Of a stretch of DNA of 64,000 bases, positions 33,714 to 58,855 are shown in pieces. Both the position numbers and the translations under genes were made by a program. The stretch is from Bispira polyomma (Eukaryota): assembly GCA_965649765.1 (NCBI GenBank), contig OZ287761.1, positions 14,508,001-14,572,000 of the forward strand, read 5' to 3'. The notes below the pieces were generated by a model. It ran no database searches. It was not told where the DNA came from and was given only the letters and a program-made list of their open reading frames with translations. Positions within the stretch are counted from its first letter, which is position 1. Every line of letters begins with the position of its first letter.

Positions 33714-36700
33714 ATGGCAAAATTGGGATTTTTAGGATACAGTTTGTGCCTGACTTTCTTCTGGATATGTGGTATAAACTGCCAGGAATACGTGGTACCA
33801 GTTTACGTCAGAGCAGATCAATACGGGACGGACCATTTCTTAATCCCCAGGCCCAAATTCGGGCCACACAAGTCCAGCTTTCACATAGAACAATTGATCC
33901 GTTTGGAGAATGAACTCCTAGGCCTCAGTGGACTAATTCTGGAGACAGAAGCCAAGTTGCATGCGAGAAAAAAACTTCAGAAGGCGAAGGACGAACGTCC
34001 TGATAAACTTAAAGATGGGGCAGAGAAGCATGTGCACAATTATACCCTAGAAACTCGGTAGGTGTCGCCTAGTTTAAACGTGCAGTCTTTTTTTTTAAGG
34101 TGGTATGCATAAAAAACTGTTATGTTCTCAGATGGAATAGAATAGTTTATTATGTTCCATACCAAGTACAAGTTACTATTGATTCAGTTGCAAAACATTT
34201 TGTAGCATGCATTAAAAATAATTTGTAGCCCTTTACAAATGTCTGTTACAATACATATAACGTTTACAATACTGGTGGCTGTCACAACTGTAATAATTTT
34301 ATCTAAATTTTCAAATTAAAACACCCTTTTGAGTTGCACTGAGATTAGGTGAAGTGAATAATAATTAACCTGCTAGTTAGGTATGAAATTAAAACATAAT
34401 TTGTAGCTTTACATTTTACTTTGAATCAATGCTTTCAGTTAAAAGAAGAAGAAAAGTCCCTAAATACACGTGTATATTTACATCATCCACCATTTAAATT
34501 TTGTAAAAATCTGCTTCGTCTGTAAATGTCTTTAGCATAAGTATTTTATGCAGCCATCACTCACTGATGAAAAGTAATTAACATATAAACATTGTTTTCA
34601 GTTTCCTTGAAGATGTAAATGAGCAAAATGAAAAAGCCTTAAAAAATATGAAAAGTTTTGTAAACAACCCACTGGCTATGTTCTCTATAAGAAAAAGACT
34701 GGCAGACACTTGGCCATATGTGATGGATAATATAACAGAGTGTAGTATGGTCTCCGAGCATGTGGGTATGTATGCTGACGACTTGACTATTATCTCTTCT
34801 CTAAAACTCTTGTTTTTGTTGTAATTTAAATATAACTAATATAGCTTTCAAAGGGTATCCTCTTTAGTGATCTAATGTTAGATCTATTGGTTCAATTTGT
34901 GCAACTTTAATTTTAATGTCAAAGTTCATAATTGCATTAAAAAAGGAGCATTAAGAAAGTCAACATTTATGCTGACAGCTGTTAAAAAAAATGTGTAACC
35001 TTGATTATGATGTAGATCCGGTACATTTTAGTAATTCTTGAATGCAAGATATATATATCTGTTTAATATTTTTACAGTTGTCGACATAAATTGTTTATTT
35101 ATCTAGCCATCAGCAACCATTTTGAAAGTGTAACCCGAAAGTTAAAAGAAGACGGAGACTTGGAGATGGCGTATGAAGATATACTCAGACTTCAAAAGGC
35201 TTATAACCTCCCAGTAAATAATTTATTATATCTGTAGCAACTCTTTCACATGAACTAAGATACCATTACTTTGGTCTTTGTGCTTGTGTACTTTTAGATT
35301 TCGTCAATAATTAAACATTGAAAAACCCAACATATTCTTCTTGTATACATTGTGTTAATACAGAAATAACGCTGCAACATTTATTTTTGTCAGTCTATAT
35401 AGTACATAGTAGTGTATCATTTATATATTGCCCCTTCTTAAAGTGTACCATTTTTTTTACTAAAATATTGCTTGAATGTTTACCATCACACAGGTTTCTA
35501 GCCTAGCCAGGGGATGGATTTTAGATGAGATAACAGAACCTCTGGGTTTATCTGACATCATAGAAATAGCGAATATCTGCCTCAACAGAGAAGACCTAAA
35601 AGGTGCTTTGGAGTGGCTTCTGCAGGTAAGAAAACATGCTATTTAGACCAACATTTTATAAAGTATAAAAATATACAGTTATAAATTTAAATGTACATAG
35701 TTTTTTTTTAATGCAGCTCGTTGGCATTTATCACTTGATTATTTGTCACCTACAAATTTACCAGAACTAATTTCACCTTTGATACAAAGTATATTTGTCT
35801 AATACCAGTTGATTATTTCTTGCTGTGAATTATATTCTATTGATTCATAATATTTTTTAATATGTACATCTTAAAGTAGAGTCAGGAGTAAAAGCATATT
35901 GACAGGCATTCATTGTGATATGACTATGAAATATTGTACTATTCCTTAATAATGTAATGAAACTCATAATTTTACATTAAAGAAAATCACAGTGATCATT
36001 TTTCATTGTTTTTAAGATTTCTAAGCTTTTGAAAACAATGGGACTACAAGGAAAACTCAAAGTAAAATACATGAATATACTGGGTGGTGCATATTTAAGG
36101 GTAAGTAGCATTTTAGTAATGCAAAGCGAAATCTTGTTTAAAAGCATGTAATTGTTTGTCTCATTTGTAAAATACATTTAATGACTGCATTCTTTTAATG
36201 TTCCTTGTAGCATTTATAAAAACAGTAGCTATATGAAGATATTGACAATCAGTACTTCATTTTCTGGGAGTATTAGGAGTGTTCAATGATCAATAAGATG
36301 AGGAGGAATTCACTATTTGATAGATCATACATTGGACATCTGTCAAACACCTGTCATGAATTAATTTTTTCAATTGGTAACAATACTTTTCTTCAAAGCT
36401 TTTGTAATGAGAAAAGATACATTCTGTGATAAAACATGAAAAAAAAACTTGTTTTGGTGTATCAATACCCTATATAATATGGGTAAAAAATAAAAAAATA
36501 TGGGTGAATAATATATATTATTTGAAGGAATATTTGTTCCCTTTACCATGTATTTCCAGAACTATAGTACTATCAGCCAACAAAAGTTAAAAATATTCGT
36601 CAGCTTTAATGCACGCATGATGAAACAAAACTATAATGATACACTGAAAAAGCCAGTTTAAGGTGATAAATCAGTTTAAAGGAGTTTCACTTTAAATTAT

Positions 36701-39700
36701 TTTCTTTGGGTAGATGGTATATTGTATAGGCCAAATTATGTTATAATATTAGCATATATTGTGCCATGTTTCCAATGATAGTGAAAAACAAAAAGGTATC
36801 TTGGCTTCTGTTTGTATAACCCTTCAATCATTGTTGTTAAAAATTACAATCTAACTAAGTGTATTCATCGTAATTTTGTTAGGGTATATCATTTATATCA
36901 TTTTATAAGTAATGATTGAATTCACAGGGCAGCATAAAATGGGACGGTAGTAGTAAAGTGGGTCGATTTTTGAACTCTCACTAAATTTTTCTACCAACAA
37001 AATACACTCAATTATTTAATTTAACACATCACTTTCGATACTCTTTACTGATTTAGTAAATTTTAAGACACTAAATGCTCTACATAATTTTTTATTGTGG
37101 TTATAAAAGATCGACCCACTTTATGATGTCGATCCACTTCATGATAACCCGTGTACATAAAACAGTGATCCATAAAGAATAATCACCACCCTATGTTTGG
37201 CGATCGTAGTTTAGTAAGCGCCATGTAATGCAGCTTTAATATAATTATCGCTATCATTATCGCGGCGAATAATTAGGAAGTGTATTTTTACCGGCATAAT
37301 TGTTTTTAGTTGTTTTTAGATTATCGGTTGTTCTTAAGAATATACGATGGAAAAATGATTGCAATTAGATCTAGAGCAAACGTGTTTTGATATCCTAAAA
37401 TGATTTTGAAATTTTCATTTTGATTAATAATGGCATGGCGTGATACATTAATTATCACCCATTTAGCATTATCTACACAATCGTTTAGAATTACAATCTC
37501 GTCAAAATACTGGTCGACGCATACTCTAGCACACAAAACTGGCACACGGGCGTTCATATTACCGGTCTTGTAATACCTTCCGTTGTGGTTTTTAAATACT
37601 AAACCATGAAACTCCTAAATGAAAACAGATTTAACTTAAAAAAATATCAGACTACAGAAAAATATAACTTTTGTCACATATATCCATGTTTAATGTTCAT
37701 AAATATACAGTGGGGGACAGGAATTCGCTCAAAATTTACAGAAATTTGACAAATGTGAGCAAAAAGAAATAATATTGAGGCAACTCAGTAGTATTTTGTG
37801 AATTTAGAAACCAAAGTCACTGGTTAATATTGATAAAAAAGTGGACAGCATTTGGCCATTGTTAGGCAATAGTAAATATATATGTATAAGCTTTATTAAG
37901 AATAAGAATAATGTTATGAAATAGTTTATGTACGTGATATATAAAATGAGAAATAGAAAGCGAACAAAGATACAGCACAATAGCCCATCAGAAGTACTGT
38001 CTAATCCTCAACCTCACACTTTGAGCAGTACCACTGTTTATTTAGTGGAGTCAGTACATCAAATTCATTTAAAAGTTATTTTACCGGACAATACTCTATA
38101 TATTTGTATTGTAGGTATGTGCATGTTATATGTATATTATATTTGTAAAAATGGTATGCAAGCAAGTCGCGACCACAACAACTCGCACCCATCGACTCTC
38201 ACATACAAGTCGCACCCCAAATTTTAAGAAGAGCTCTAATTTAAGTCACGGTAGCGTGGATTAACAAGATATTGATTAAAGCAAATATTTATTAATGCAA
38301 ATATAATAATAAGGGATTTGTAAGATGTATAGTAAATTTATTATTTTGCCGACTGTCATCTTATTTTAAAGCACGGAAGACAAGTCGCACCCCAAATTTT
38401 AGGAGGTTTAATTGAAGTCACGGGGATTAATAAGATTTTGACAAAGGCAAATATTTAGTAATGCAAAGGAATATATAAGATGTATAGTAAATTTTATTAT
38501 TTTACCAACCATGATTTTATTTTAAAGCACGGAAGTCCCCAAAAATATATGCATTAACCACAGACTTAATAAAAAACAAGGCCCGCGGATGTTATAGTTA
38601 ATAGTTATGTAATATTTGATTAAAGAGTGGTGAAAAATGACAAATATTGAATTTAGAATGATGAAAAGTTAAGCAAATATTTATTATGTCTTATTCATAA
38701 ACGGCTATTATTCAAAAATCGGGTGCGAGTTGATGGGTGCTAGTCGTTTTAGAAGCGACTTGTTCGTATTCCATTATATTCTGCATATAATTTCCTTTAA
38801 ATTGAATTTTCGACAGTGATTAGGTGTAATAACCATATTAACGGCAAAACGCTGTCCACCACAAATCGCTATACCCCCCGAAACATCATCCGATATTATG
38901 ACCCAACCAGTATTATGAATACACATGTACTGCTACCCTGCATAAACATAATTTTGTTTGGGGTTTGAAGTGCATCGATTATTGCCCAAGGAGACTCGAT
39001 GCATCATTCAATGCATCAAAAACTCTATTTTAACCAAATAAAGTGCTGATACATACCTAGATTCTACTGGGTTTTTTTTTAACACAATATCCCTTTAAAT
39101 TTAGGTGTAAAACGAACATAAACTTCACAAATCTATTATTTATATTTGTTCTTGGCGACAATGTGCTTTTCGGTGCATACTAAAATTCGGCCAATAGGGA
39201 GTAATATATAAATGATCGAGTCACAAAGCCCAGCGCGATGTATCGTTTTTCTTGTCTCACTCGATTGATGCATCGATGCTAGTGCTAATCGTCGCAGCCT
39301 TACTACAATATATAATAGATGTTGAAATAAAATAATCAGAACTCTCTTGTGGTATATTAATTTATTCAAAACTACAAACACTGTCTAGTTTTTTTAAAGT
39401 AATTATTTTGAGATACAACTCTACTCTAGTGTCAAATCTGTTCAACTTTAAACTGTACTTTTGTGTATTCCAGCTGAATAGGCTGCAGGAAGCAAAACTA
39501 GTTTATGGCCAGCTAATAAAAGAAGACCCAGATAGCAGAATAGCAAATGCCAATATGCGGCTCATTGAAGAGAAAATGAAGACTGAGGCGGCTAAAGAAC
39601 AGAAAGCTAAGGTGGAGGACCCCAAGAAGAAATCAAAGAAAGGCAAAACTGTACGATATTTGTCACCATATTAATCATGAAAAAACATTCTATGAATATA

Positions 39701-42700
39701 ACATGTTCTTATATCAGTTGACAATAAAGTCACTGTGATATATTGCCTGTTGGACTTTGATATGTGTAAAACTGTAATACGTTTCTACTGGCAAAAATAA
39801 CACTATTTATTTTCAAATATCTTTATTTATCAGCCATCAATAAAGTCACTGATATATGGTTGGTACTGTGTGTCACTAATAGTGTCAAATTTCATATTGT
39901 GACGAGCAGTTTATTAGAGAAAGAAGAAATCAATACAGGGTAGTTGATCAATGTTTTAAGCATGGCAAATGACCGGCCTTCACCAGGTCTAATGTCGACT
40001 TTCCCACATACATTCTGTATCTGAGAATTGAACCCTGACTGGGAGGCAAGATTGTTAAGTGACCGATGCACCACCATGGTCCCTTGTTATTACAGTAAAA
40101 TGTGGATCTGTCAAAAGTACTCCGGTACTTCTTGTAGAATACAGTCATGTCTTCATACAAACTCTAAGGAAAAAAAAGTGTACCTTCTAATTGTATCCAC
40201 CGATCAGGTGGATACTTTGGTTTATCGTTGGCTACGCCACCGCCACCACCGTAGAGAGATTTTTGTCGTTAACACTCTCAGCGGAAAACAAGACCAGCTA
40301 GCTTAGCCAAATTTGCAGGATATCTTCATTGGGAGGTAAGCTTCTCTGCGACTGATATTAGCCTCATTCTGAAAAACAAGATGGCCGCCATCGGCATTTC
40401 TTTGAAAATTGTCCATCTTTTTCTACTGGCTGGTTCTCGTAACTAGAAGGTTAAATCTCTTCATAGGTGATATGTATAACAGATATATATGTCCTCTACA
40501 AGCATGCAGACATTTGACCTTGAAGTTCTTCATTGAAGGTCATTCACGGAGTGCCAAAGTACCCCACATGGCGAACTTTAAAAGTGCCCATATCTCCCTT
40601 ATTATTGGTCCTAGAGGTTTGGTATGTGAAGCCTACCTATAGGAAATCATGGGCTAGGAATCTTCTGATGTCGTCAGGTTTGACCTTGGCCCCTCATTCA
40701 AGGTCAAACAAGCTATCCAAACTTAAAAGTGCTTATAACTTGCTTATTATTGGTCCTAGAGGTTTGGCATGTGAAGCCTACCTATAGAAAATCATGGGCT
40801 GGGAAGTGCTTATAACTCGCTTATTATTTGTCCTACAGTTTGGAGATGTAAAAGCAACCTATAGGAAATCATGGGTTGGTAGTCTTCTGATGTGGTCAGG
40901 TTTGACCTTGGGCCCCTCTTCAAGGTTAAATGACAATAGCCAAACTTAAAAGTGCTTATAACTCCCTTATTATTGGTCCTACAGGTTTCAAATGTAAAAC
41001 CAACTTATAGGTAATCATGGGCTGATAATCTTTTGATGTGGTTAGATTTGACCTTGGGCCCCTCCTTCAAGGTCAGACGAGGGTAGCTATAGCTTGGGTG
41101 CTTCCTAACTATGGTGTTCTGTCTTTCTGGTGGATACAAATATGCATCGGTTTTCCAATGCGCTAGGTCTAGTTTTACCATAAAATAGGCACTAGTTATG
41201 CAATTTTTTTAGCATTTTATTAAGACCTAACTTAAGGTCTTCAGGGTTTTACACACTGGAGGGAGTTTCCTTTTAAGAGAGGTGCAATGCTGGACTACCA
41301 AAATTACATCTTGTTTCAGCCTTTATAGAAATGTATATACGTGTACATTTATTCTATTGATACCTCTATAGTTGTATGTTTAAATTATTTTTTTCTCTGT
41401 TGTTCTACAGAGTAAAGGGAAATCTGTGGATGAGAAAAAAGACAAGAAAGAAGAAGGTTACAAAGAAGAGTGGTGGTTGAAATACTGCAGGGGTGATCTG
41501 CCACCAGTGAGTTTGTGTTTTGTAGCATTTGCCTGGTGTTGTAACTGAAAAACCGGTTTAAACCAGTTGTTGGTTGGCCTCTTCATAAAAGCCAACTACC
41601 AGTTAAAACTAGTCAAAACCAGTTGTTGATCTTAGATTATATTCAGAAATTTTACATAAATGGATACACTACAGTTTCAATATTTATGTAGAACATTATA
41701 CTTTGGAGCCACCCACTGACACATGTGCTGCACAGTTTTGTGCTTTAGGATCTATAGACAGTATAATCATTTATAATTTACATTTTTCTGATTTTCTGTT
41801 TGTCGCTTGGATTTATAAACCAACAACTGACTAATGAAAAGCGAAAACCAACCTCAACCGTGTTTAAAGTGAATTTTGTTGAGTAGGAATCAGTAACTGT
41901 TAGTATTGTGAAAATTGAACGAGAAATCAAAGAAGTTGTAATTTTGCAATAACGATTACTGACAGTGTTATGTGCATATCCTTTGCAAGATATATTGCCA
42001 AATGAGGCTTCCTACAAGCTGCTTGCCGAATATACAGAATTTACAGAAATGTAGATGAATATGAAGATTCCTAAGTAGATGTAGTTATATAACGTACAGC
42101 AACATGGTGTGATTTCACCTGAAGGCTGGTAGTTTTTTCGGAGTCTCTGATGTTATTTATTTTTGCTCTTTGTATTTGTAGTATTATGAGAGGGAAACCA
42201 TGTTGAAGTCCTACATTAAGGAGATTCCGATCTCGGGGAAGAAGTATAAGGTCACGCCGCTCAGTTTATACCCACCTGTGATTCTGATTAAAGAAGTCCT
42301 GGAGAACTTCACTATCAGTAAACTCATCAACTTTGCCACAGAGGAGGTAAATTAGACATCATGAAAGCTCTGAAAAGGGGGCACTTGTTTGTATTCACAC
42401 TGTTAATTAATTTTATTGTGCCGCCTAAATTTTCTGTGATTTTTTATGAAAATTGATTTAATTTTGTATCTCTTGTCATATTTTACTTTTGTAAGCTAAC
42501 CTTTTCCTGTTAATTGGAGATGCTTTGTTTTTGTCCTGACAAAAGAAAGAAACATTTATTCGTTTTGACAGTTATAAATTTTAGTACATGTAGATGAATA
42601 TTATAATAAATGTAACTGGCAATATAAATAACAGTAGTTTTAAATTTAAGAAGACTTTAATAGTTAAAGCCTTTCTCTTATTTACCAATCAAAAACTTAT

Positions 42701-45700
42701 TTGAGGGAGTATTTCTTTTGTGAATTTAAAAAACTGAAAATCGCTTAATTTTACCAAGTTTTGCCAAATTTATTTAATTAATTAAAATGTGTTCAACTGG
42801 CAATCTGAAAGGTATAAATGATCAAGTTTCTACATATTCCTTCTTGTTAAAAGTCTTGAGGAAGTGCAACTGAACACAAGTTAACCTTGTCTCTTTAAAA
42901 CTATTTCTTTGTAGATTGTAGAAAAGATACACACTTATTCACAGCCAGATGAGGCTAGGTATAATTTATAATACCACACAAATCTTTTGGATTTTTTTTT
43001 TTTCTGGTACATTTACTTTTTTATTTTTCTCCTTATGGTTTGTCTGTGTTTTAGTTTCTGTTGGCAAAAACGTAAACGTTATATTTTGTAAACAATGGAG
43101 CACAAACAAGAATCTTTTCAGGGGTTTGTTTTGAGGGCAGAACAAGTAGTCGGTCAATCCCTATGGAGCGGTTCAGCTTGTGGCCTGAGAATTGAGTCTC
43201 ACCGCGCCTATTTTCCCACTCAATTGTAGCCTTAGTTTGTTTTAGGTTTTGTGACAGTAGAGTAAGGATGCAACCGAGGGCTGGACACTCGCTGTATGAG
43301 CCCATTTTTTCAAGGAATTGAGCCCATTTTCCCTACTCGACTACTGGCTATTATAGCAGATTATTGCTCCCACAATATAAAAGACATATAGAATATTAAC
43401 ATTTGCCAATTTTGGCCTGGTGACAGCAAATAATATTTAGGCTTTTGTCAAGTAACCTACATTTTATTGCATATGTTTTAAAATATCAGACGTTTTTTCA
43501 CAAAAACATCGCTGCGGGAAATGGCCATATTTGTTTCTGGTGTTTCCAATTGGTAAATACTAAAACTCGCAAGTACCCGAATTCGAGTCGAGTTTCCGAG
43601 AACGAGCACTCAAAGCATTTTTTTTGCACCCGTCCCACCCCTACAGTACAGTAAAAATAAATATAAGTCTAAGACATAATAGACTTGAAAAAGAAGAAAT
43701 AACACAGCAATAACACCATTCGATAAAAACCAAAACATTGAACTGTCCTTGATATTACTGTAGATTCTCTGTAAGTCAAATGTCTAATATTTACCGGATT
43801 TGGTTCTATGTATGGAAATATTCTAGTTTTATACCCAGTTTATGGATAATAATTATTTTGGATGTTGAGAACAGATAATTGGTTCTAGTTATAGAGAACT
43901 TTGACTTACCCTGATGCTAGTTACAGAAAATCTACGGTACATCATTGTTATATTATAATACGACTATTATAATCTTTTAAAGAGCATAATTCCATCAAAA
44001 GCTGACTTCATTTCTTGATTACAGTGAAAGCTCATCTAGATGTTGTAAACCGCCAAATATCTAAGGCCTGAAATGAAATAATGTCCTCACTTTTTGATTG
44101 TTTTGTCCTTCTGGGAAGTAGCTTTGAATATCACACCTGCTCCCAAGTTTATTGAGCAAAGGTGTTTGCCCTGGGAAATATATATTTTATATGTTAGTTC
44201 CCATTCACTTAAAGTGATAGTAGAAGATGATTTTTTTGTCAGTATCCAAATTTTAAAACTGGTACCCTTAAAACAACAGCAGCTTGTGACCAAAGTTTTT
44301 CAGTGAAACCTATGTTTTCCGAACTTCTGTTTTCCAAATATTCAAGTTCACAAACTCATTTCAACTCTCCCAAATTTATCTTTTTCTATTGCTCGATAAA
44401 CCAAAAATAAAATGGCTTTCGATTTTATAAATAAAGTAGAAATTCCATTTATCCAAACAAAATGTTGCTCTCTCCCAACATGCCTGGCTAATTGAGGTTC
44501 TATGCTGTACTAATATACTGCCTCTTTAAATAGTGGCAGTTTGCAGTGTTTTCGTTGGAAATTTTTTTTTAAGATACATGTAATACTTATTATGTCTTCT
44601 GGATATATTATGTTCAGTTTGTGTATTATTTTAAAAAAATATTTTTTTTTTGTGTACTATTTTTTTAGAAAAGTACAATCTTTAATTAGTTAGAACCATT
44701 CAGTTTCTGGGGTTGGGTGTTTGTTATATTTAAGGACATTGTGATGATAAATATTAAAAATTTTCGAAATCATTAAAATTACAGTCAAATTTGTGTAGAA
44801 GATGACTGACCGTGGGAATCAGTAAAAATGGTTGCATGTAGAGATCGGTCGTTCTGTGAACCTATCGGTCATCACCAAAGTTGTCGATAATCAGAGATTG
44901 TGTAAAATTTTTCTTTAACTAGATCGTTGTTGTACATGCTATTAACACATAATCCCTTCTAATAGTTAATTCTATATATTATATAATTCTATTCGTGTAT
45001 TTTACTTTGTATAGTTAACTGAATTTGTCTCCCACAAGCTATGCTTAGTTTTCAAGAGTCATTTGACAAACTCCTTCCAAAAGTTTTGTTTGAGTTAACT
45101 CGGTCTGCCATTCAACTCGTGAAAAGTAGAAAACTTTGTTTTAAAACTCTCTTTAGACCAAAGTGCTTCTGTAATTTAATCGGGTGCATATGTACTTTCA
45201 GTGCACCTGTGTTCTGGAATGATGAGACTTACTGGATGGAGAAGTTCACCGTCACCATGCGTAACCTAACTTACCAGAAGTACAGTGTGGAGAGCCACGC
45301 GAAACTCAACCTGCTTGGGGCGGTTAGGGTGAGTGAGTAGTACGTACAGTCAAGAATCAAATACAGTGCTATGTAAAGCGCCTAAATCAATGAAATGTGA
45401 TAGTACAGTCAAAAATTCTATTGTATTTTATAAAAGTGAAACCCTGTTAAGTCAAATCTAAAGGGACCATAAAAATTTGTACCACTTAACAGAAATTCTA
45501 CTTCATCAGAGGTAAATTTCAATTACAAATATAGCAGTGAGACATTATAATAACTTCTACTGAACAGGTAATTCTACTTATTACAGTTCTACTTGAAGGG
45601 GTTTAACTGTATATATACTTTAGGCACTTTATTTATGCGAGGCATCTTCTTTAAACCAAATCAATTCAACCAATCATGTGTCCCAACAACAGAGCTTGGG

Positions 45701-48700
45701 TCGTTTTTCATCCACAGGTAATGGCGTGTATAGACATCTTCCCCAAATGATGTTATCCCACCCATTGAACCTAGCAGCATTACTTTTCTGATCACCAGAC
45801 TCCTCCCTGATAACCACTAGGCCATGGGAGACCATCAGTAACATATGTATGGCGTATTATATATATGTTACACCTAAAAAGTACATGTCACTGTTGTATT
45901 TGAACCTGACTGAGTCAGAACTCAAAAGATCAGCTTGTGTTCTTTTTGCCACCCAGTCTTAGAATGCAATTCTTAAGAATTTTTCTTAGCCTCAGAAATT
46001 TAGATTCTTTTGAGAAAAAAAAATATTCTCAACCAATCAAATTGCTTGAAACAAAAACTTTTAAGACAATGAATCCTTGTGAATACCAGCGCAGGATAAG
46101 GACTTCAACTTAAGCAGGAGTTCTTACTTAACGAGGTTGTGTTTAAAGTGGAAAATTCCTTTGTGGTTGGAGGACTACAGACATTTCTCCTGACCTAAAA
46201 GGGAAATTGACCGTTTTTAGGGGGATTTTCAGGTTTTCCTATTGTTGGTGATCGACTGTACAGTTATATTGTACATTTTGAACGTGCCTTATTGATGTGA
46301 GGCATCTTCTAAAGCACAACGACAGAATCAAATGAACCAATTTAAAAGTCCCAAAAACATATCCAAGGTCATAAGGAAGGAGGGAATTAAGTGGAGTGAG
46401 CGAGTTTTAAAAAAATAAGTTTTTTTTCTAAACCTGAAAAGTGTGTCTGGTGATCTAAACAGGGAGACTACTCCATAAGATCGGCGCAGAAATTAAGAAA
46501 GCTCTAGATCCAGCGCTCTTTGTGGGTTTTACAGAGAAAACAGAAAGTCTCTTTCTTCTTTTTCTTTCAATTTATATGTTTATATCTTACAGGTGTACAA
46601 TGTAGGAGCAGGTGGCACTTCAAATCCTGGACGTGGTGAATTGAAAGTGACGCCTCGATCTGTAAGTTGCCCTTCTACAGATAAAAAAGTCTGTTTAATC
46701 AAATTTCGCGGGGGACATGACTTTTGGTCCGATAAATGGGATATTCGGATACACTGAAGGCCTACATAACAATACATGTTTGAGTGGACAAATGGGGGTG
46801 AAAATTGGGGACTTTACCTTTGATTTTAACATTAAAACTGTCACTACCAAAGCTTGCATTACACTGGTATCACAATAATTAGGTGGTAATTCCATGAAAT
46901 ATTAACTCTTCTAGTAAACTACAGGTTAAATCCTTTACTATTTAGAAGGTCCACTCAGTTAATCTGGATTTTCGGATAAACGGACGGTTGGTTAAATAGA
47001 GAGGTCTGTTATACAGAATTCTTCTGTACTTGATGTCCTTCTTTAGAAAACTTGTTGCGATGAAAGGTCTAAAGCCTATATATTCACTTAACCCCTTAGA
47101 TACCATGTCTGTCGACTGGCATTCGACAGTGAAGTCTATTCACTAGTGCCATGTCCGTCGACCAGCAGCCGACACCCCCATAATATTGTTTTACTTTCCT
47201 GCAGTACAGCATAATTGAAATGGCTTAATATATTGGAGTTCCTCGATTAAAATATCATATATGAGTGCATTATGAAAACCCCCAGAATTGCCTGTAAGTG
47301 AGTGTTTTAATGACTTCAGCTATCTGTAACCTTATTTCTGTGAATTTCCTTCGGTATATGTGAAGACTGTTCCCTTGGTGGCAAAGGGGTTAAATGTGAA
47401 GAGATAATTATGGTAATCATGGAGTGTTTTTTTTTTTATAAAAAGCCTTTAATGATACACGCACTGCACTCTCTTTTAATTTGTATGATTTTACATGTAG
47501 AATAATTTACAGTATAACCTCTGTTGTCGGACCCTCTGTATCCAAATATTCTATTTTATAAACTCAATTTCCCTCTCCCAAACTATATTCTTAAATCCTA
47601 CTTTCTTTCTCCTATCTCCAAAGATGTCCGTAAAATAGAGCTTCTACTATATGTAGTGAGGCACCTCAAATAATGTTATCATTTTATTGATTTTACCATT
47701 CTCTTATTCAGTGATTCAATGATATGTGTCCCCAAAAAAGTTGCGAATAATAATGAAATCAATATCTAAAACAAGAAGATAGTAGTCAGAGACTGCAAAA
47801 CCTCGCCCAGAAATTCAATCACGGACTTGCAAATTGGTGATTGGGGTTAATATATTGAGTAAGGTGTACTTTACTTTTAAATATGAAGTTAGGGTTATTA
47901 TTTCTAAAAATTAAATAGAAATGGGGTATATAGTCAACATAATAATATATTACATCAGAATGTACACTACCATTAGTGCTAGTTTGTGACGTCAAATTGG
48001 GGTTATTATATGAATTATATCGGCCAGAAACGGCTTATTTTATTGAAAGGTGTATTTTATTTCAAAATATGAAGTTAGGGTTATTATGTTGAATATAAAC
48101 ACCATTTCCATAGCTGTAAAATGAGACGTGTTTCAAGTTATTTTTTATGGTAACAAATCTGTACCTCTTGGCTTTCAGATTTGTATTGTGACATCATAAT
48201 GGAAGGTTTTTGAATGCAAAAAAACTACAGAGTTTTGGGTTGTTTGAATATGGTCATAGTGAACAAATTAATCCCTCAATTCTTTGAAAATTACGATATA
48301 TATAAAATATAAGCAATATTTAATGTTATTGTGTACAAAACCTGATTTTTAGAGTGGTAGAAATTTGTATTTGAAGCTAATTCTGTAAGGTCACAACTCA
48401 GTACTTTTTGTATGTAATTTGCCGCGAATTTTCAATATTTTGGATCTATTTCTGACTGTTTGGTGTTATATTTTGACCTACATAAGCATAATAATACCCT
48501 TTTATAAGTGGATAATAAAAGAAAAACCTCCTTTGTGGTGTATATTACAAACATATACACCATTCCAGTAGTTTTCCTATTATATTACATCGTGTACGCT
48601 ACCATTAGTGCTACATTGTGACATCATAATCAGAAATTGTGTATGAATGATATTTTGATGACGTAATGATGACGTCATCATATTTCATATACATCCCCAA

Positions 48701-51700
48701 TCTTGGAGTCGGTGTAGCTTCGGTTTGCCCAACGCTGTCTTTCTTTTTTTTAATATTATGCAAATGATCCGTGATCTCGGAGTCAGTGTAGCTTCGGTTT
48801 GCCGAACGCTGTCTTCGTTTCTTATATGTGGCGCAGAATTTAAGAGATCTTCAGAGCTATTTTTGTATATAAAAAAAGGAAATCTTGTCTTAAAGCTACA
48901 GTTCACAACCGATCTGTATGTAGATTTTGTGTAATAGTGGTTTGTACACTCACACACACAAACACACAAACCGAAAACAAAGGGCAAGGTTAATGATGAT
49001 ATTTTAACTGTACTAAATGTACAGTACAACCTCTATTATTCAAATAAGTTGGATGAGAGCTAGATTTTGTTTGGATAATAAAAGATTAAAATAAAATCGA
49101 TGAGACATATTAGTACAAAACAATAAGAAAATGTGAATTTGGGAGAGTGGAAATATGTTCATAAAATTAAATATTTGGATAATAGAAGTTCAGATAATGC
49201 AGGTTTTACTATATTATTTTTCAAATTAATTGATTAATGGGATGTAATAACTGTAATGAATATATTAATTACTAAATGAATTCATCAATGTGATGTTTTA
49301 ATTGTATGAAATATATTAAATTCTAAATTAGTCGATTAATGTATATATGTTTTAACTGTATTAAATGTATTAATTTATAAATCAATGATTTTAATGGTGA
49401 TGATTGTTTTAATTTTTCAGACTTGGGAAAAGAATTATATTGGACGATATGTTCTGTTTGTAAGTAGATTTTATTTATACAGTAGGTTGAATGTTTTCCC
49501 AGAGAAAGTTGAATCTTTCTATTTAAAAAGGGAACCAATTGTGAAAATAAACTACGGTGAAATTTGATCAAGCTCCTTTTCTGCTATTAATACAACATTT
49601 GTTTTGTGGAAGGTTTATTTCAATTATTTCTTATTTTATTTCTTGTACTAAGTACATTCAAAGTTTTACAAACAAAAAGTTGAACCACTATTTATATACA
49701 AAATAAGGTTTAAAGAAAATGAAAAAAAGAAAAGAAAAAGTTAATAAGTACTTGATATATATCATATCAACCTGTTATATTTGATCCATCTTTAAAAATC
49801 AACCTGTCATATTTTATCCATCTGTTAAACATTCACCTATATAATTGTATAACGACATATATATATATTTTCAATCCAATGTGACGCAATTTGTTGTGTC
49901 AGCATTGATTAGAATATGCAGTTTCCACTTCTGGTGCAATTGTATCCACTTAATCAGTAGAAACCCTTTAAAAAAGATTTTTTTTGAAAGGAGAAGTGTT
50001 ATAAAAAGTGTTTGTTATCAATCCTTTCTGTTCGTCCAAGAAAAATGTGTACAATTTGAAAAAAATATATACAAATATGAGATGTTCCTTATTTTCAGTT
50101 GAAACCACCTAAAGCTGGCGGCCATTTTGCGTTTCCATGGTTGCGGGTGAGCGTGAAACCCGAGAAGGGAGACATTCTGTTCTGGCAGTTCCGTACACCG
50201 ACTGGCAAGGTTCACCCACGGGTCCAACACTGGCTGGAGTGTCCAGTTATCCTGGGAGACTTCTGGTGTAAGTCCACTTGGTGTTATACTTCACCCTTTC
50301 GACTAGTGGGGTGCGACTGTGTAGCAAAAATTTGGGTCTGGGATATCGTTTGACAAAAATCGTCCCGATTCTTGAGAACACATGTGCATGATCCCTCAAA
50401 ATGACCTATTTTAGGATTCAATAGATATACAGTGTAACCCTGTTAAGTCGAATTTGAAGGGACTATAACATTTGTTCTATTTAACAGGAATTCTACTTAA
50501 CAGGGTAAATTTCAATTAGAAGTATAGCAATATGATCTTATAATTACTTATACGTACCAGGTAATTCCACTTAACAGAATTCTACTAAAAGGAGTTTGAC
50601 TGTTATTTGTTTGCAGTAAAAAGCCTGCATTTTCGGAATTACGGTATCTTTATTTAATCAACTTATTCAGAAAATCTGTTACCAATAGTGTATATTAACC
50701 CTTTCTCAACCTAAAAAAAAGATTACAGATAGCTGGAGTCATAAAAACACACACCACAAATTACTTCCGGCATTATATAACGGCCCCGCGTATAATTTTG
50801 TTTTTATATAGGCATTTAAATGTATATTATGACATTGAGTTACCAAACTGACGTCATCAATACATAATTATGACGTTATTATGACGTGTAACAGTAGCAG
50901 AAATAAAAAAAATAAAATATGCATATATTTGTAAATATACAGGCTTAGTTAAGACAATAACAGCAGGTTTGTCATTTGTAGAGTCCAAGATTTCCATTAA
51001 TACCCCAAAACTCTGGCCAATTGCATCCACAAACCCATTAAACACACTTGTGTTTAGTAGTATAGGTAATCGTAAATTTTTTTTTTATTTACACTTGTCG
51101 AAATTCTAATGTTTATATGACAGACATATTATATTGGTGTAGGTTCACATTGAAGACATAACATCCGTAAAATGTTTCAATAAATTACACTGCTAGAAAT
51201 TTTGATTGTCTATGTTGTTTGTAAAGATAATAAATAAAAGGGTGATAAAAAGAGTAATTTTTAGTATCAAAGTACAGGTACCAAAACTAAAATTTGAATT
51301 TATTTGAGTTAAAATTCACTTTCAACGGCTTATGTTATATTATGACAACCAGATTTAATGGTGGAGGAAACCAATGCTAAAGCATGGTGTAAACCACTGT
51401 CCTATGGATGGTACCTATCAAAACTTTTCCACATGACGGAATGAACACGATTCAAACCCACGCTGGTAAGAGGCCAGTGATTTTGAAGCAGGGGCTTCTA
51501 ATGCGGCCCCTATATTCTCTATTGTAAACATTTTATTATCTAAAAATTTTTGGAGTTGAACTGAGTTTAGTATAAATTGAATATTCGGACACTAGAGGTT
51601 CAGATAATGGAGGTTCTGTTGCACATTACTACAATCTTTTTTTGGTTTACTTTATTTTATCTACAGATGCTGAGCAGATGATAGAACATAACAATATGAT

Positions 51701-53994
51701 AGACAAAGTGGACTTATCTTACATTCCCGAAGTTATAAAGAAATCTGACAATGGTTCAAAAAAGAAGAAAATATTAAAAAAGAAGAAAAAAGTGGTGAAA
51801 AAGGAGGAAGAAGGTAAATAAGAGTTAATGTTGCACCATGTGAAGTCAATTCATAGTTAACATTGAACCCTGTAAAATAAATTCTTATACAGTCGAACCC
51901 CTTTATGTAAAGCTCTGTTAACTCAATTTCCTGTTTATGTGGAACAAAATTTCTGGTCTCAAAAAGGTATTTTCTTTTATAATCTATCCTGTTAATTGGA
52001 AATCCTGTTTTAGTAGAAGTATTTCTACTGGTCCCTTGAGGTTCGACTTAAAGGGGTGCAACTGTTTATGTAGTTAACCTGTGTGAAGTCAATTCTTATA
52101 GTTAACATTGAATTTTTGTAAAGTCAATTCTTATAGTTAACAATGAACCCTGTGTGAAGTCAATTCTTATAGTTACATTGAATTTTGTGAAGTCAATTCT
52201 TATAGTTAACATTAAGCCATGTGTGAAGTCAATTCTTATCGCTAACATTGAACCCTGTGTGAAGTCAATTCTTATAGTTACTAATGTGAGTCAACTCTTA
52301 TAGTTTTAACCCTGGACCCTGTATGAAGTCAATTTTTATAGTTAACTTTGAACCCTGTGAAGTTATTTCGGTGCTAGATATAGCTAAACTTGATGTCATA
52401 TGTGATGCCATAAACATCTCAACTGTTGCATTGGCTGTGATGAAGGTGTAAATTATGACATTTGCTTTTGAGTCTTACAGTAGCAAAATTTTTTATCCAA
52501 AAGATCATTGTAAAGATGACACCTTACTTAAAATAATAACGTCAAAATATTCATTTCTGAAGGTCAAGCTTTTCATCAATACCCGCCTCAAAAATGCAGT
52601 CTAGAAACAGCACATGTAAAAATCATAATGGTTTTACCACTTTTCAGTCTGATAATAAATATCTTATGCATGTCTCTAAACAAGTTTTAATAATAGAGGA
52701 TCCACTCTAATGGCCTTTTGATTACGACTGAACTTATCTGATCATGGGTTTATATGATGGGTATACAAATGTAGCTTGCTTGGAATTAATAAGGAATACA
52801 GTAGACTCTGCATGAGTCAAATGTTCATTATCCACAGGATTTTACTTGACTTATGGCTAACTTTTACTTATATGTGTGTAGGTTTATAGTCTGACATCAC
52901 TTCTATTGACTTTACAATTTACACCCCCCAGCCTGGGTTCTTCCACTTGTCAACCAATTGTTCAGTCTCAGCTCCTTCAGCAAGCATACTAGCCATGCTG
53001 TCACATAAGGCGCAACGACTAACACCAATTAGCAGCCAGGAACCCATTTATACACCTGGGTGGAGAGGGACAAGTTTCGTGTGAAGCACCTTTCCCAAGG
53101 GTACAATCTCCTGGCCTGCAGCAAGGATAGAACCTGGACCCTGAGATCCAAAGTCATACACACTAAACACTAGGCTACAGAGACCATGGGGTGGCACTAT
53201 AGAAGTAAATCATTAACATTAATAATATTTACCCTCTTAACTATTGTTTTATACAGAAGAAGAGGAGGAAGAGGAGGATGAAGCTCCAGTGGAAGAGCCT
53301 GAAGAGGATGAAGAGGAGGTTGAAGAAGATGTCGAAATGGATGAAGAAGAAGCAGAGGTAGAGGAGGATGAAGAGAAAAAAGAAGTGCCCAAGAAGAAGG
53401 TGGTTAAGAAAACTGTCTCCAAAACAAAGGTCAGAACATTGTATTGTAGAAGTAGGCTTTGTTCGTAGCAATTATGTTAGTTTATAAATGTTTTTTCAAA
53501 TAGCGGAATGTAGCTTAAAATTGTCCTTTTTAAAGCAGATTTTACACGCATAAGGTAACATTAGGCGATAATAAGATAGTTTATGACAGTTAGAAAGAAA
53601 TAGTTTATAATAGTTTATGTTGTTCAGATGATCGAGATTCTATTGTTAATTCTATGTAAATGTATCATGTGATTAGACTTCCTTCTGAATTTAGTTCACA
53701 CTGGCTGTAGACAGGTTTTCCATTTTATTTATATTTTCTTAAATTTTTCAGGATAAGATGAAAGAACCCAAGGAGAAGAAGCATCCAAAGGAAGCCAGAA
53801 GTAAGTCTGAGGAAAAAGAAGTCAAAGCTAAGATGGCAGATAAAGAGAAGCCAGCCACCAAGGCAACAAAGGAAGCCAAGGGGAAGCCAGATGAGAAGAA
53901 AAAGGAAGACATGAAAGTTGAGAAGGAGAAGGTGGTCGTTAAAAAAAAGAAAGTAAAGAAAACAAAAACCAAGAAAAAGGCAGTCAAAAAGTGA
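33714..53994 (+). CDS. Prolyl 4-hydroxylase alpha subunit-like protein (divergent, predicted catalytically inactive) with signal peptide and long Lys/Glu-rich C-terminal tail; 16 exons, 759 aa
   Basis: Exons 33714-34057, 34602-34765, 35107-35213, 35494-35625, 36017-36100, 39474-39650, 41411-41506, 42182-42346, 42915-42958, 45202-45328, 46593-46661, 49421-49459, 50099-50267, 51667-51813, 53257-53429, 53752-53994. All AG/GT; phases join into one open frame of 2280 nt. P4HA landmarks in order: signal peptide MAKLGFLGYSLCLTFFWICGINC, FVNNPLAMFSIRKRLADTW, DLEMAYEDILRLQKAYNL, TPR-like ALEWL/DPDSRIANAN, YCRG, VYNVGAGG, AGGHFAFP..V.PEKG..LFW, CPVILG. Confidence 0.88.
38153..38772. mobile_element. Non-autonomous TIR element with an internal ~175-bp tandem duplication
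   Basis: Imperfect ~45-bp TIRs (CAAGTCGC..AACTCGCACCCATC / GATGGGTGCTAGTCG..GCGACTTG); the unit ACAAGTCGCACCCCAAATTTTA..TTTTAAAGCACGGAAG occurs twice. Confidence 0.7.
40191..41174 (+). mobile_element. Helentron-associated non-autonomous element (HINE / DINE-1-like)
   Basis: 5' TTGTATCCACC with adjacent inverted copy GGTGGATAC, (CCA/CCG)n microsatellite, central ~150-bp tandem repeats (AAAGTGCTTATAACT..TTGACCTTG), 3' subTIR GGTGGATACAA (41129-41139), hairpin GCATCGG-TTTT-CCAATGC, end CTAGTT. Confidence 0.8.
47092..47389. mobile_element. piggyBac-like non-autonomous element
   Basis: TTAA|CCCCTTAGATACCA ... TGGTGGCAAAGGGG|TTAA. Confidence 0.7.
51823..52366. repeat. ~36-38 bp minisatellite interrupted by a MITE (51890-52064)
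   Basis: Unit TGAAGTCAATTCTTATAGTTAACATTGAACCCTGTG, about 2 copies before and about 8 after the MITE. Confidence 0.85.
52928..53185 (-). mobile_element. tRNA-derived SINE (family B)
   Basis: Same sequence family as 8012-8315 (CCCAGCCTGGGTT..TTCAGTCTCAGCTCC..CCTGGGTGGAGAG..ACAGAGACC). Confidence 0.8.
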
Positions 53995-57628: not shown

Positions 57629-58855
57629 CTAATCTAATCTAATCTAATCTAGTCGTACTTTTATAGCGCTTAATCTTTGTACAACAAATTCTAAGGCGCA
57701 ACAAACCCAAAACGTTAATCAAAAATCAAAAATAGTGGGCGGATGGCAGTCGTAACCAGGGAGACTACCGTAAATGGTTGCGACGGCTAAGGTGGAAAAG
57801 CCTGTTCAAAAAGATAGGCCTTCAGCTTACTCCTGAAAGAGGAGAAAGTTTGTGCCAGGCAAACATGATCAGGTAGGCTGTTCCAAATGAGGGGGGCCAT
57901 CATGAGCTAGGCAGTGATTGAACTGAACTTTGGATTTGTGGATGCGAGGGTTGAAAGTGGGAATGTTAAGGTATAATTTATCAGGGTTACTGCGCCGTGT
58001 CCTGACTGAGCATGTATATTTGGATAGATGGGGGCTAAAATAAGTGGGTAATCCAGAATTTAGAAATTTATGTATTATTGTTGCTGTTTTGAAAGCAACA
58101 CGATATTTTATTGGGAGCCAGTGCAGTGAATTGAGTACAGGAGTAATGTGGGAAAATTTAGATGTTTTGGTCACAATACGTGCCAACGAGTGTTGGATAT
58201 TCTGAAGGCGTCTGAGATCACTACGAGATAAGGAACAGAACAAAGAGTTGCAGTAATCAAGCCTGCTGCTGACCAAAGCATTGGCAACAGTGATTGCAGT
58301 GGATTTGGAAAGATAGCATCGAATCCGCCTGAAATCACGGAGGCCAACAAAACATGATCTACACACCGATGCGACATGGTTAGAGAAGGAGAATTCAGAG
58401 TCGAACACCACACCCAGGTTTCGTACTTTGTCAGCTGGAAAAAACCTGCTGCCAAGAATGTCAAGTGGAAAACAGCTAGACAATTTTTCCCATTGCGACT
58501 TGGAGCCAAACAAAATAAACTCAGTCTTCTTAGGGTTCAGCTTGAGTTTATTTGCTGCCATCCAATGTTGTACATCAACAAGGCAGTTCTGTAAGGAAGT
58601 GAAAGCTGCCTTGGCAGAGTCAAGTGTAAGGTGGATATACAGTTGGGTATCATCAGCATAGAAGTGAAAGTTTATGTTTTTGTATGCAGCAATAATCTTG
58701 CTGAGTGGAGTGGTGTACATGGAAAACAAAATGGGACCCAGGACGGAACCTTGGGAAACCCCAAATTTTAACCATGTTGGGTCAGATAAGATATTGCCAA
58801 TTTTGACTGATTGGAATCTATCAGACAAATATGCAGTGAACCACTTAAGCACCAT
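57629..58855 (-). mobile_element. 5'-truncated L2/CR1-group LINE (RT C-terminal half and 3' end)
   Basis: ORF 57869-58855 with GVSQGSVLGP, YADD, LKLNPKKTE, SRLDYCNSL, LHWLPI. The 3' end terminates in a (GATTA)n tail (57629-57651). Confidence 0.92.

What the first reader, a model, noticed from the sequence alone, without database searches (positions are those of the whole stretch)
33714..53994. Intact but catalytically disarmed prolyl 4-hydroxylase alpha homolog (candidate P4H pseudoenzyme)
Seen: 16 exons splice into one 759-codon frame with no stop or frameshift and P4HA landmarks in order. Known: collagen P4HA binds Fe(II) via H-x-D in QVxNYGxGGxYxPHxD and a distal His in TxHAACPV, and binds 2-oxoglutarate via the Lys in GxKW (human P4HA1 H412, D414, H483, K493). 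Here the first motif reads VYNVGAGGTSNPGRG (46593-46661; no His or Asp), the distal one reads VQHWLECPV (His shifted by one), and GxKW has become GDFW. Inference: the gene is maintained over 20 kb with intact splicing but cannot hydroxylate. It may be a non-enzymatic Pro-rich-peptide binder, chaperone, PDI-sequestering regulator or secreted matrix protein.
Basis: partly seen in the sequence, partly recalled or inferred. Interest (0 to 1): 0.85.

Follow-up and report, generated by a model that had tools for sequence, protein, structure and literature searches.

The report
Conserved catalytically dead collagen prolyl hydroxylase
A marine animal, probably an annelid worm, keeps a copy of the collagen-modifying enzyme prolyl 4-hydroxylase whose iron and cofactor sites are gone, and related species conserve the same dead site almost unchanged, which points to an undescribed non-enzymatic job in the secretory pathway.

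Summary
Observation confirmed. Sixteen GT-AG exons splice to 759 codons. All six Fe(II)/2-oxoglutarate residues of collagen P4HA are replaced: H430→G493, D432→G495, H501→W561, Y421→V484, T467→F526, K511→F571. The gene is single-copy, and the genome has canonical paralogs.

New here: orthologs from unannotated marine sequence share nine intron positions and the replaced motif YNVGAGGTSNPG[RK]. That exon is the best-conserved part (about 80% identity, against about 40% for the neighbouring extension). Among orthologs dN/dS is 0.06-0.08; against the window dS is saturated. Ortholog introns of 60-90 bp leave almost no room for an alternative HxD exon. So this is a conserved pseudoenzyme subfamily, not decay.

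The structural C294-C504 cysteine pair is kept. A signal peptide and an exact ERSE 285 bp upstream favour an ER chaperone or scaffold (about 0.45) over a secreted matrix protein (about 0.25). Nemerteans have a related dead form.

There is no RNA evidence, the host is not identified, and the function is inferred. The scan had not noted this on other DNA of this genome.

The parts
33375..33380 (.). CACGTG box, a second ACGT-core site upstream of the ERSE
   Evidence: function not tested
33410..33428 (+). Exact ER stress response element CCAAT-N9-CCACG, ending 285 bp before the ATG
   Evidence: only copy in the window (0.05 expected); 396 in 1.035 Gb, so about 2e-4 per 500 bp; motif chosen after the fact, conservation untested
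33714..34057 (+). Exon 1: signal-peptide-like N-terminus (about aa 1-23, judged by eye) and start of the N (dimerisation) domain
34602..34765 (+). Exon 2: P4Ha_N domain
   Evidence: PF08336 E 1.6e-6, above cut-off
35107..35213 (+). Exon 3: end of the N domain
   Evidence: E 0.005; ortholog L054 17/35 identical
35494..35625 (+). Exon 4: peptide-substrate-binding (TPR) domain, first helices; Y158 replaced by L235
36017..36100 (+). Exon 5: TPR domain; D192/Y193/Y196/Y199 replaced by N269/I270/G273/L276
39474..39650 (+). Exon 6: end of the TPR domain (N227 kept as N304; R223, Y230, Y233 lost) and Lys-rich linker
41411..41506 (+). Exon 7: linker and C362 (codon 41486-41488), equivalent of structural C294
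42182..42346 (+). Exon 8: N-terminal extension of the catalytic domain; PDI-linking C311 replaced by S378 (Cys in orthologs)
42915..42958 (+). Exon 9
   Evidence: phase-2 intron shared with orthologs
45202..45328 (+). Exon 10
   Evidence: 127 nt in L048 and L054 too
46593..46661 (+). Exon 11: former HxD strand; Y421→V484, H430→G493 (46629-46631), D432→G495 (46635-46637); best-conserved exon
49421..49459 (+). Exon 12 (39 nt)
   Evidence: 42-nt counterpart in L048 and L056
50099..50267 (+). Exon 13: double-stranded beta-helix core; T467→F526, H501→W561 (H560 adjacent), C504 kept as C564, K511→F571; conserved H555
51667..51813 (+). Exon 14: last strand (C529 absent) and first basic block
53257..53429 (+). 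Exon 15: acidic block (35 D/E in aa 619-665)
53752..53994 (+). Exon 16: basic tail (42 K/R in aa 666-759) and stop; no KDEL-type signal
   Evidence: L037 also ends in a Lys-rich exon

Best explanation
The gene encodes a P4HA-derived pseudoenzyme that works without catalysis in the ER lumen, as a client-binding chaperone or scaffold for a secreted structural protein. Shown by sequence: signal-peptide-like start, N-TPR-linker-catalytic-fold architecture, loss of all six metal and cofactor residues, retention of the C294-C504 cysteine pair, and strong purifying selection on the remodelled site in several species. Inferred: it folds oxidatively in the ER and dimerises through the N domain. The emptied pocket is packed by W561, F526 and F571. 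The glycine-rich loop that replaced HxD and the now aliphatic TPR groove form a binding surface for a client that is not a polyproline helix. The ERSE raises expression under secretory load, and the charged tail keeps the protein or its client soluble. That it lacks P4H activity: about 0.93. That the role is ER chaperone or scaffold: about 0.45.
For: Active-site map. Orthologs with the same motif and introns. Exon 11 identity 18/22 and 18/23 against 49/125 and 51/125 for the adjacent extension. Window against L048, L054, L056 over the 13 motif codons: 8-11 base changes, 8-10 of them at third positions, 0-1 amino-acid change. dN/dS 0.06-0.08 among orthologs. Clade support 100/99 on a long stem with short inner branches. 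Fold kept in the relative P0008: AlphaFold pLDDT 73, best match 7ZSC, Foldseek E 1.8e-10, Z 17.4. Canonical paralogs carry the enzyme function. ERSE.
Against: No RNA run exists, so expression and splicing are not shown directly. There is no KDEL-type signal and both PDI-linking cysteines are absent, so how it would stay in the ER is unexplained. The polybasic and acidic tail looks like that of an extracellular protein. The ERSE is one motif found after the fact, with no ortholog promoter to compare. No client is identified. The folded protein is a relative at about 25% identity, and its alignment was rich in canonical P4HAs, which biases the model toward that fold.
Confidence: 0.45

Rival explanations
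1. A non-catalytic secreted structural or adhesive protein of cuticle, mucus or tube. The folded dimer acts as a cross-linker, and the Lys-rich and Glu-rich blocks bind polyanions or mineral ions.
For: No ER-retention signal; PDI-linking cysteines lost (C529 in all members read, C311 in this protein); five N-x-S/T sites; basic-acidic-basic tail; Lys-rich tail start in L048 and a Lys-rich last exon in L037; an acidic run in the L054 linker; orthologs come from marine biofilm samples.
Against: The charged blocks are the least conserved parts, while the pseudo-active site is the most conserved. An ERSE is typical of ER-resident factors. P4HA subunits are insoluble without PDI (PMC12340787).
Confidence: 0.25
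2. A regulator of the active enzymes: it pairs through its N domain with canonical P4HA subunits, or holds PDI without covalent links, and so tunes collagen hydroxylation.
For: N domain intact; several P4Ha_N loci in the same genome; C311 kept in most orthologs; a similar role was speculated for Drosophila CG34041.
Against: A passive competitor would not need an invariant new motif at the dead site. C529 is lost throughout and C311 here. The proline-binding groove is gone.
Confidence: 0.13
3. A re-armed protein: a new metal or small-ligand site built from other conserved residues (H555, H560, H580, H470, E496, E563, E579) gives a different chemistry or a sensing role.
For: These His and Glu residues are the same in the core orthologs that cover them. 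H560 can be aligned on H501. Active-site-level conservation is what enzymes show.
Against: H560 is E or R in the outer members P0008, P0016, P0018 and P0037. The 2-oxoglutarate pocket positions are bulky hydrophobics. No structure of the core protein was available to test geometry.
Confidence: 0.12
4. A decaying pseudogene, an assembly error, or a model that misses an alternative catalytic exon.
For: No transcript evidence; long branch in the tree.
Against: Open frame over 16 exons; DNA runs match exons 12-13; same motif in four ortholog contigs of three lineages; dN/dS 0.06-0.08; ortholog introns beside exon 11 are 60-90 bp; only two HxD triplets lie on the + strand of 45329-50098, neither in P4H context.
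Confidence: 0.02

Closest known systems
Collagen prolyl 4-hydroxylase alpha subunits (human P4HA1/P4HA2; PDB 7ZSC, 2V5F)
   Same: Domain order N-PSB-linker-CAT; P4Ha_N hit; ancestral intron positions shared with a canonical paralog (L034); C294-C504 pair; fold, shown for the relative P0008.
   Different: All of H430, D432, H501, Y421, T467 and K511 replaced; groove tyrosines and the D192-R223 bridge lost; C311 and C529 lost; one-residue insertion near H501; charged linker and a tail of about 165 aa.
CRTAP (and, from memory, SC65/P3H4) of the prolyl 3-hydroxylase family
   Same: Non-catalytic ER relatives of a collagen hydroxylase that act as scaffold or chaperone; CRTAP binds collagen peptide through a TPR groove (PMC12433258).
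   Different: They lack the dioxygenase domain altogether (own knowledge) and CRTAP keeps its aromatic proline pockets. This protein keeps a constrained dead dioxygenase domain and has lost the aromatics.
Drosophila PH4alpha expansion (26 genes; CG34041, PH4alphaSG1/SG2)
   Same: Divergent P4HA paralogs of mostly unknown function; CG34041 is non-catalytic; PH4alphaSG1 is ER-resident in a gland.
   Different: CG34041 has no catalytic domain. The passages read describe no conserved full-length dead subfamily. No orthology was tested.
Nemertean 'P4HA-like' proteins XP_074662426 (Tubulanus) and XP_064646808 (Lineus)
   Same: Full-length P4HA lacking both His ligands, with W at H501 and E before the conserved Cys-Pro; on the same side of the best tree, support 77/76.
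   Different: They keep D432 and K511, lack the insertion, the FWQF signature and the charged tail, and are only automatically annotated. Common origin is neither shown nor rejected.

Membership tests
Collagen P4H alpha subunit (homology) | P4Ha_N dimerisation domain | tested here: met
   PF08336 28.4 bits on exon 2 (cut-off 25.3), second part on exon 3
Collagen P4H alpha subunit (homology) | TPR-type peptide-substrate-binding domain in the middle | tested here: met
   (TPR-like, weak), 67, 89: aligns helix by helix with human PSB-I through a bridging homolog; N227 kept
Collagen P4H alpha subunit (homology) | C-terminal double-stranded beta-helix with the C294-C504 cysteines | tested here: met
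   (7ZSC, E 3.5e-4); C362 and C564; fold of relative P0008; the window protein itself was not folded
Active collagen P4H | Fe(II) triad H-x-D...H | tested here: not met
   G493, G495, W561; H560 adjacent at best
Active collagen P4H | 2-oxoglutarate residues Y421, T467, K511 | tested here: not met
   V484, F526, F571; orthologs V, F, L/M
Active collagen P4H | Proline pockets Y158, D192, Y193, Y196, R223, Y230 | tested here: not met
   L, N, I, G, I, L here; V, N, L, S, V, L in L054
Active collagen P4H | PDI-linking cysteines C311 and C529 | tested here: not met
   S378 and no C-terminal Cys; the only Cys are at 12, 19, 23, 162, 234, 362, 564
Active collagen P4H | alpha2beta2 tetramer with PDI and hydroxylase activity | not testable with these tools
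   needs recombinant protein
Pseudoenzyme | Enzyme fold with catalytic residues missing | tested here: met
   rows above; definition as in PMC12869072
Pseudoenzyme | Maintained by selection as a protein-coding gene | tested here: met
   dN/dS 0.06-0.08 among orthologs; dN 0.25-0.27 in the core with saturated dS against the window
Pseudoenzyme | Expressed and shown to be inactive | not testable with these tools
   no RNA run; no assay
ATF6/XBP1-regulated ER chaperone | Functional ERSE in the proximal promoter | tested here: inconclusive
   exact motif at 33410-33428; transcription start, conservation and induction unknown
ATF6/XBP1-regulated ER chaperone | ER retention signal | tested here: not met
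   C-terminus is a basic run with no KDEL-like end and no membrane span

The most novel reading that the evidence does not exclude
An old lophotrochozoan (annelid plus nemertean) branch of P4HA lost its iron ligands once and then, in one tube-dwelling or biofilm-settling lineage, fixed a new invariant active-site motif. It became a stress-regulated, PDI-independent dedicated chaperone, or a His-based metal-binding protein, for a secreted structural material: a P4H-family counterpart of CRTAP or HSP47 that keeps its dead dioxygenase domain as the working surface.
Probability: 0.2. Interest if true: 0.8.

Novelty: new variant of a known kind. Interest (0 to 1): 0.58.

Why it matters
Collagen P4H alpha subunits are treated as enzymes, and automatic annotation labels even the dead nemertean relatives as such. 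A single-copy, strongly conserved, full-length dead P4HA gives a natural test of what the P4HA scaffold does without chemistry (chaperoning, PDI binding, regulation of active paralogs). The invariant replaced motif marks the residues to mutate. No description of this subfamily turned up in the papers searched, and its closest members lie only in unannotated sequence. Pseudoenzymes are common, though, and no client or phenotype is known.

Tried and rejected
It was built from coordinates inside scripts and compared only with sequences already fetched. External searches used single exons by reference, or alignments of fetched relatives with at most one window exon.

Alignment A2 (many exons as rows) was badly misaligned and never used for a search.

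My first exon boundaries were off by one base at several joins and were corrected.

A possible extra exon near 41950-42050 was dropped because orthologs align across the exon 7-8 join with a one-residue gap. Alternative HxD exon: rejected.

JGI metagenome scans found nothing. RNA: no run exists, and the three runs laid are DNA.

Atlas searches gave only generic P4HA clusters or unnamed short clusters. Paper searches for an inactive P4HA, for serpulid tube proteomes and for the accession numbers found nothing that describes this family. The host could not be named.
Full report
**1. The observation.** The window is AT-rich animal DNA at C14:14.51-14.57 Mb of a 1.035-Gb, 75-contig assembly. Reading 33000-55000 and splicing by coordinates gave 16 exons with GT-AG at all 15 introns, 2280 nt, and 759 residues plus stop. 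Exon 2 matches Pfam P4Ha_N above cut-off and exon 3 matches its second half. Exon 13's best solved relative is human P4HA2. Three sequencing runs hold the stretch; they are genomic DNA, match exons 12-13 without a difference, and are probably the source sample. There is no RNA evidence.

**2. The active site.** The P4HA2-PDI structure paper (PMC9676403) names H430, D432 and H501 as iron ligands and Y421, T467 and K511 as 2-oxoglutarate contacts. I mapped them through a canonical intronless paralog of this genome. The register is also fixed by a phase-0 intron just before the motif, shared with canonical paralog L034. The result is G493, G495, W561, V484, F526 and F571: all six are replaced, three by large hydrophobic residues. 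The distal site has a one-residue insertion. phmmer places it after H560, so that H560 matches H501. But H501 lies three residues before a cysteine that forms the structural disulfide, which gives W561, and relatives have W or Y there while H560 varies. I take W561 as the equivalent. In either register the first His and the Asp are gone.

**3. Other functional surfaces.** The intrachain pair C294-C504 is kept as C362 and C564, and also in L048, P0008 and both nemertean proteins. C529, which links to PDI, is absent in every member whose C-terminus could be read. C311 is Ser here but Cys in the orthologs. In the peptide-binding domain the residues that form the proline pockets (PMC12433258) were mapped with the human sequence shown: only N227 survives, and the tyrosines become mostly aliphatic or small residues, also in ortholog L054. 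So proline-rich peptide binding of the P4HA type and covalent PDI capture are both unlikely. The protein starts with a signal-peptide-like segment (judged by eye), has five N-x-S/T sites, a Lys-rich linker, and a basic-acidic-basic tail without an ER retrieval signal.

**4. It is a conserved subfamily.** Exon 13 searched against 1.84 billion representatives gave a 64% identical hit and several more distant ones sharing FWQF and an aromatic-x-[EQ]-CP motif. Two further searches added more fragments, 17 proteins with cluster members. Their contigs come from marine metagenomes, including samples from the marine biofilm study PMC6355793, and from unnamed runs. L048, L052, L054 and L056 have introns of 60-90 bp and all read MYNVGAGGTSNPG[RK]AE at the former HxD strand. 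L037 and L048 share HWLECP and a Lys-rich tail start. Nine intron positions are shared, and where the orthologs lack an intron (3, 7, 8) they align straight across the window's joins. The small flanking introns leave almost no room for an alternative catalytic exon, and the window's own introns hold no candidate.

**5. Selection.** Against L048 and L037 synonymous sites are saturated while dN is 0.25-0.27 in the core. Among L048, L054 and L056, dN/dS is 0.061-0.076 over 152-166 codons (Nei-Gojobori). The dead motif is the most conserved part: 18/22 and 18/23 identities in exon 11, 35-37/56 in exon 13, 58/107 in the TPR domain, about 50/125 in the N-terminal extension and 11/42 in the linker. 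Over the 13 motif codons the window differs from each ortholog by 8-11 bases but by 0-1 residue. A site that had merely been released from constraint would not look like this. It has a new requirement.

**6. Relationships and fold.** In a maximum-likelihood tree of 23 catalytic regions, the window protein, L048, L037 and the more distant P0008 form one group (100/99) on a long stem with short inner branches. Two nemertean proteins annotated as P4HA-like also lack both His ligands but keep the Asp and the Lys. They fall on the same side of the best tree at 77/76, which may be long-branch attraction. P0008, the only member of the group whose whole catalytic region lies in one open frame, folds like C-P4H: pLDDT 73, Foldseek E 1.8e-10 and Z 17.4 to 7ZSC, and the Atlas model agrees at TM 0.74-0.78. 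In the host the gene is single-copy. Two intronless paralogs have the full catalytic set and a third has at least HxD, so collagen hydroxylation does not depend on this gene. The genome has erythrocruorin linker genes and no molluscan haemocyanin hit. That suggests an annelid but does not prove it; the haemocyanin search had no positive control.

**7. Promoter.** It is exact, at 33410-33428, the only one in the window (0.05 expected). With 396 copies in the genome the chance of one in a given 500 bp is about 2e-4. A CACGTG box lies 30 bp further up. This fits an ER protein-folding role, but it is a single motif chosen after the fact, and no ortholog promoter was available.

**8. How it most likely works.** Shown: architecture, loss of catalytic, peptide-pocket and PDI-linking residues, retention of the structural cysteine pair, conservation of the replaced site. 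Inferred: a signal peptide takes the protein into the ER, where it folds and dimerises through the N domain. The emptied pocket is packed with W561, F526 and F571, and the glycine-rich replacement loop with the aliphatic TPR groove binds a client. I put loss of P4H activity at about 0.93. For the role: ER chaperone or scaffold 0.45, secreted matrix component 0.25, regulator of active P4HA or PDI 0.13, new metal or ligand site from the conserved His and Glu residues 0.12, pseudogene or artefact 0.02.

**9. Known relatives and novelty.** By descent it belongs to the P4HA family; by the catalytic criteria it is not a P4H. It most plausibly works like CRTAP, a non-catalytic scaffold of a collagen hydroxylase family, but unlike CRTAP or Drosophila CG34041 (PMC12340787) it keeps a complete, tightly constrained dead catalytic domain. 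Searches of the open literature found no description of such a subfamily; subscription papers were not searchable, and older work on Drosophila PH4alpha paralogs could not be read. Pseudoenzymes make up about 8% of enzyme-like genes in Drosophila, so the class is ordinary. The conserved new motif and the possible annelid-nemertean depth are the new parts. Verdict: real feature, new variant of a known kind, interest 0.58.

**10. Limits.** The species behind the ortholog contigs are unknown, and L052 and L054 are near-identical, so they count as one lineage.

Noticed in passing
window 13032-13111, 13748-13873, 14690-14750 (+): Last exons of a front-end fatty-acid desaturase (QIEHH box; Pfam FA_desaturase E 0.0015), the upstream neighbour on the same strand.
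   Followed up: partly
window 25536-28896 (+): A LINE-like element (endonuclease and reverse-transcriptase-like ORFs in three pieces, poly-A near 29300), recognised by eye.
   Followed up: no
window 57869-58855 (-): Reverse-transcriptase-like ORF of a second LINE fragment.
   Followed up: no
G000 C14:19385012-19386688 and C14:5978070-5979707 (L022, L023): Two intronless, catalytically complete P4HA paralogs (558 and 545 aa) on the same contig, sisters in the tree; possibly retrogenes. Their TPR grooves also seem to lack several tyrosines.
   Followed up: partly
G000 C2:22.27-22.32 Mb, C2:30.04 Mb, C6:12.98 Mb, C6:51.11-51.15 Mb: At least seven further spliced P4Ha_N loci, some in tandem; only one HxD exon could be read (L034).
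   Followed up: partly
P0009 (L051) and P0033 (L050): Nemertean proteins annotated as prolyl 4-hydroxylase-like lack both His ligands (F-x-D, W at H501) and are 39% identical to each other: a second or sister pseudoenzyme group, and a likely misannotation.
   Followed up: partly
L039:199-1032 (P0008): Outer member of the dead subfamily whose C-terminal half is encoded without introns, with a different replacement of the HxD strand.
   Followed up: partly
L049:52-264: An ORF that looks from memory like the N-terminus of an opine dehydrogenase (no Pfam hit) lies on the same strand just before the P4H-like exons; nested gene or misassembly.
   Followed up: no
G000 C7:48557639-48568253: Two erythrocruorin linker-chain genes on opposite strands, the main clue that the host is an annelid.
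   Followed up: no
window 52078-52359 and 40727-41080: A 36-bp minisatellite (8 copies) in intron 14 and a 77/146-bp tandem repeat in intron 6.
   Followed up: no
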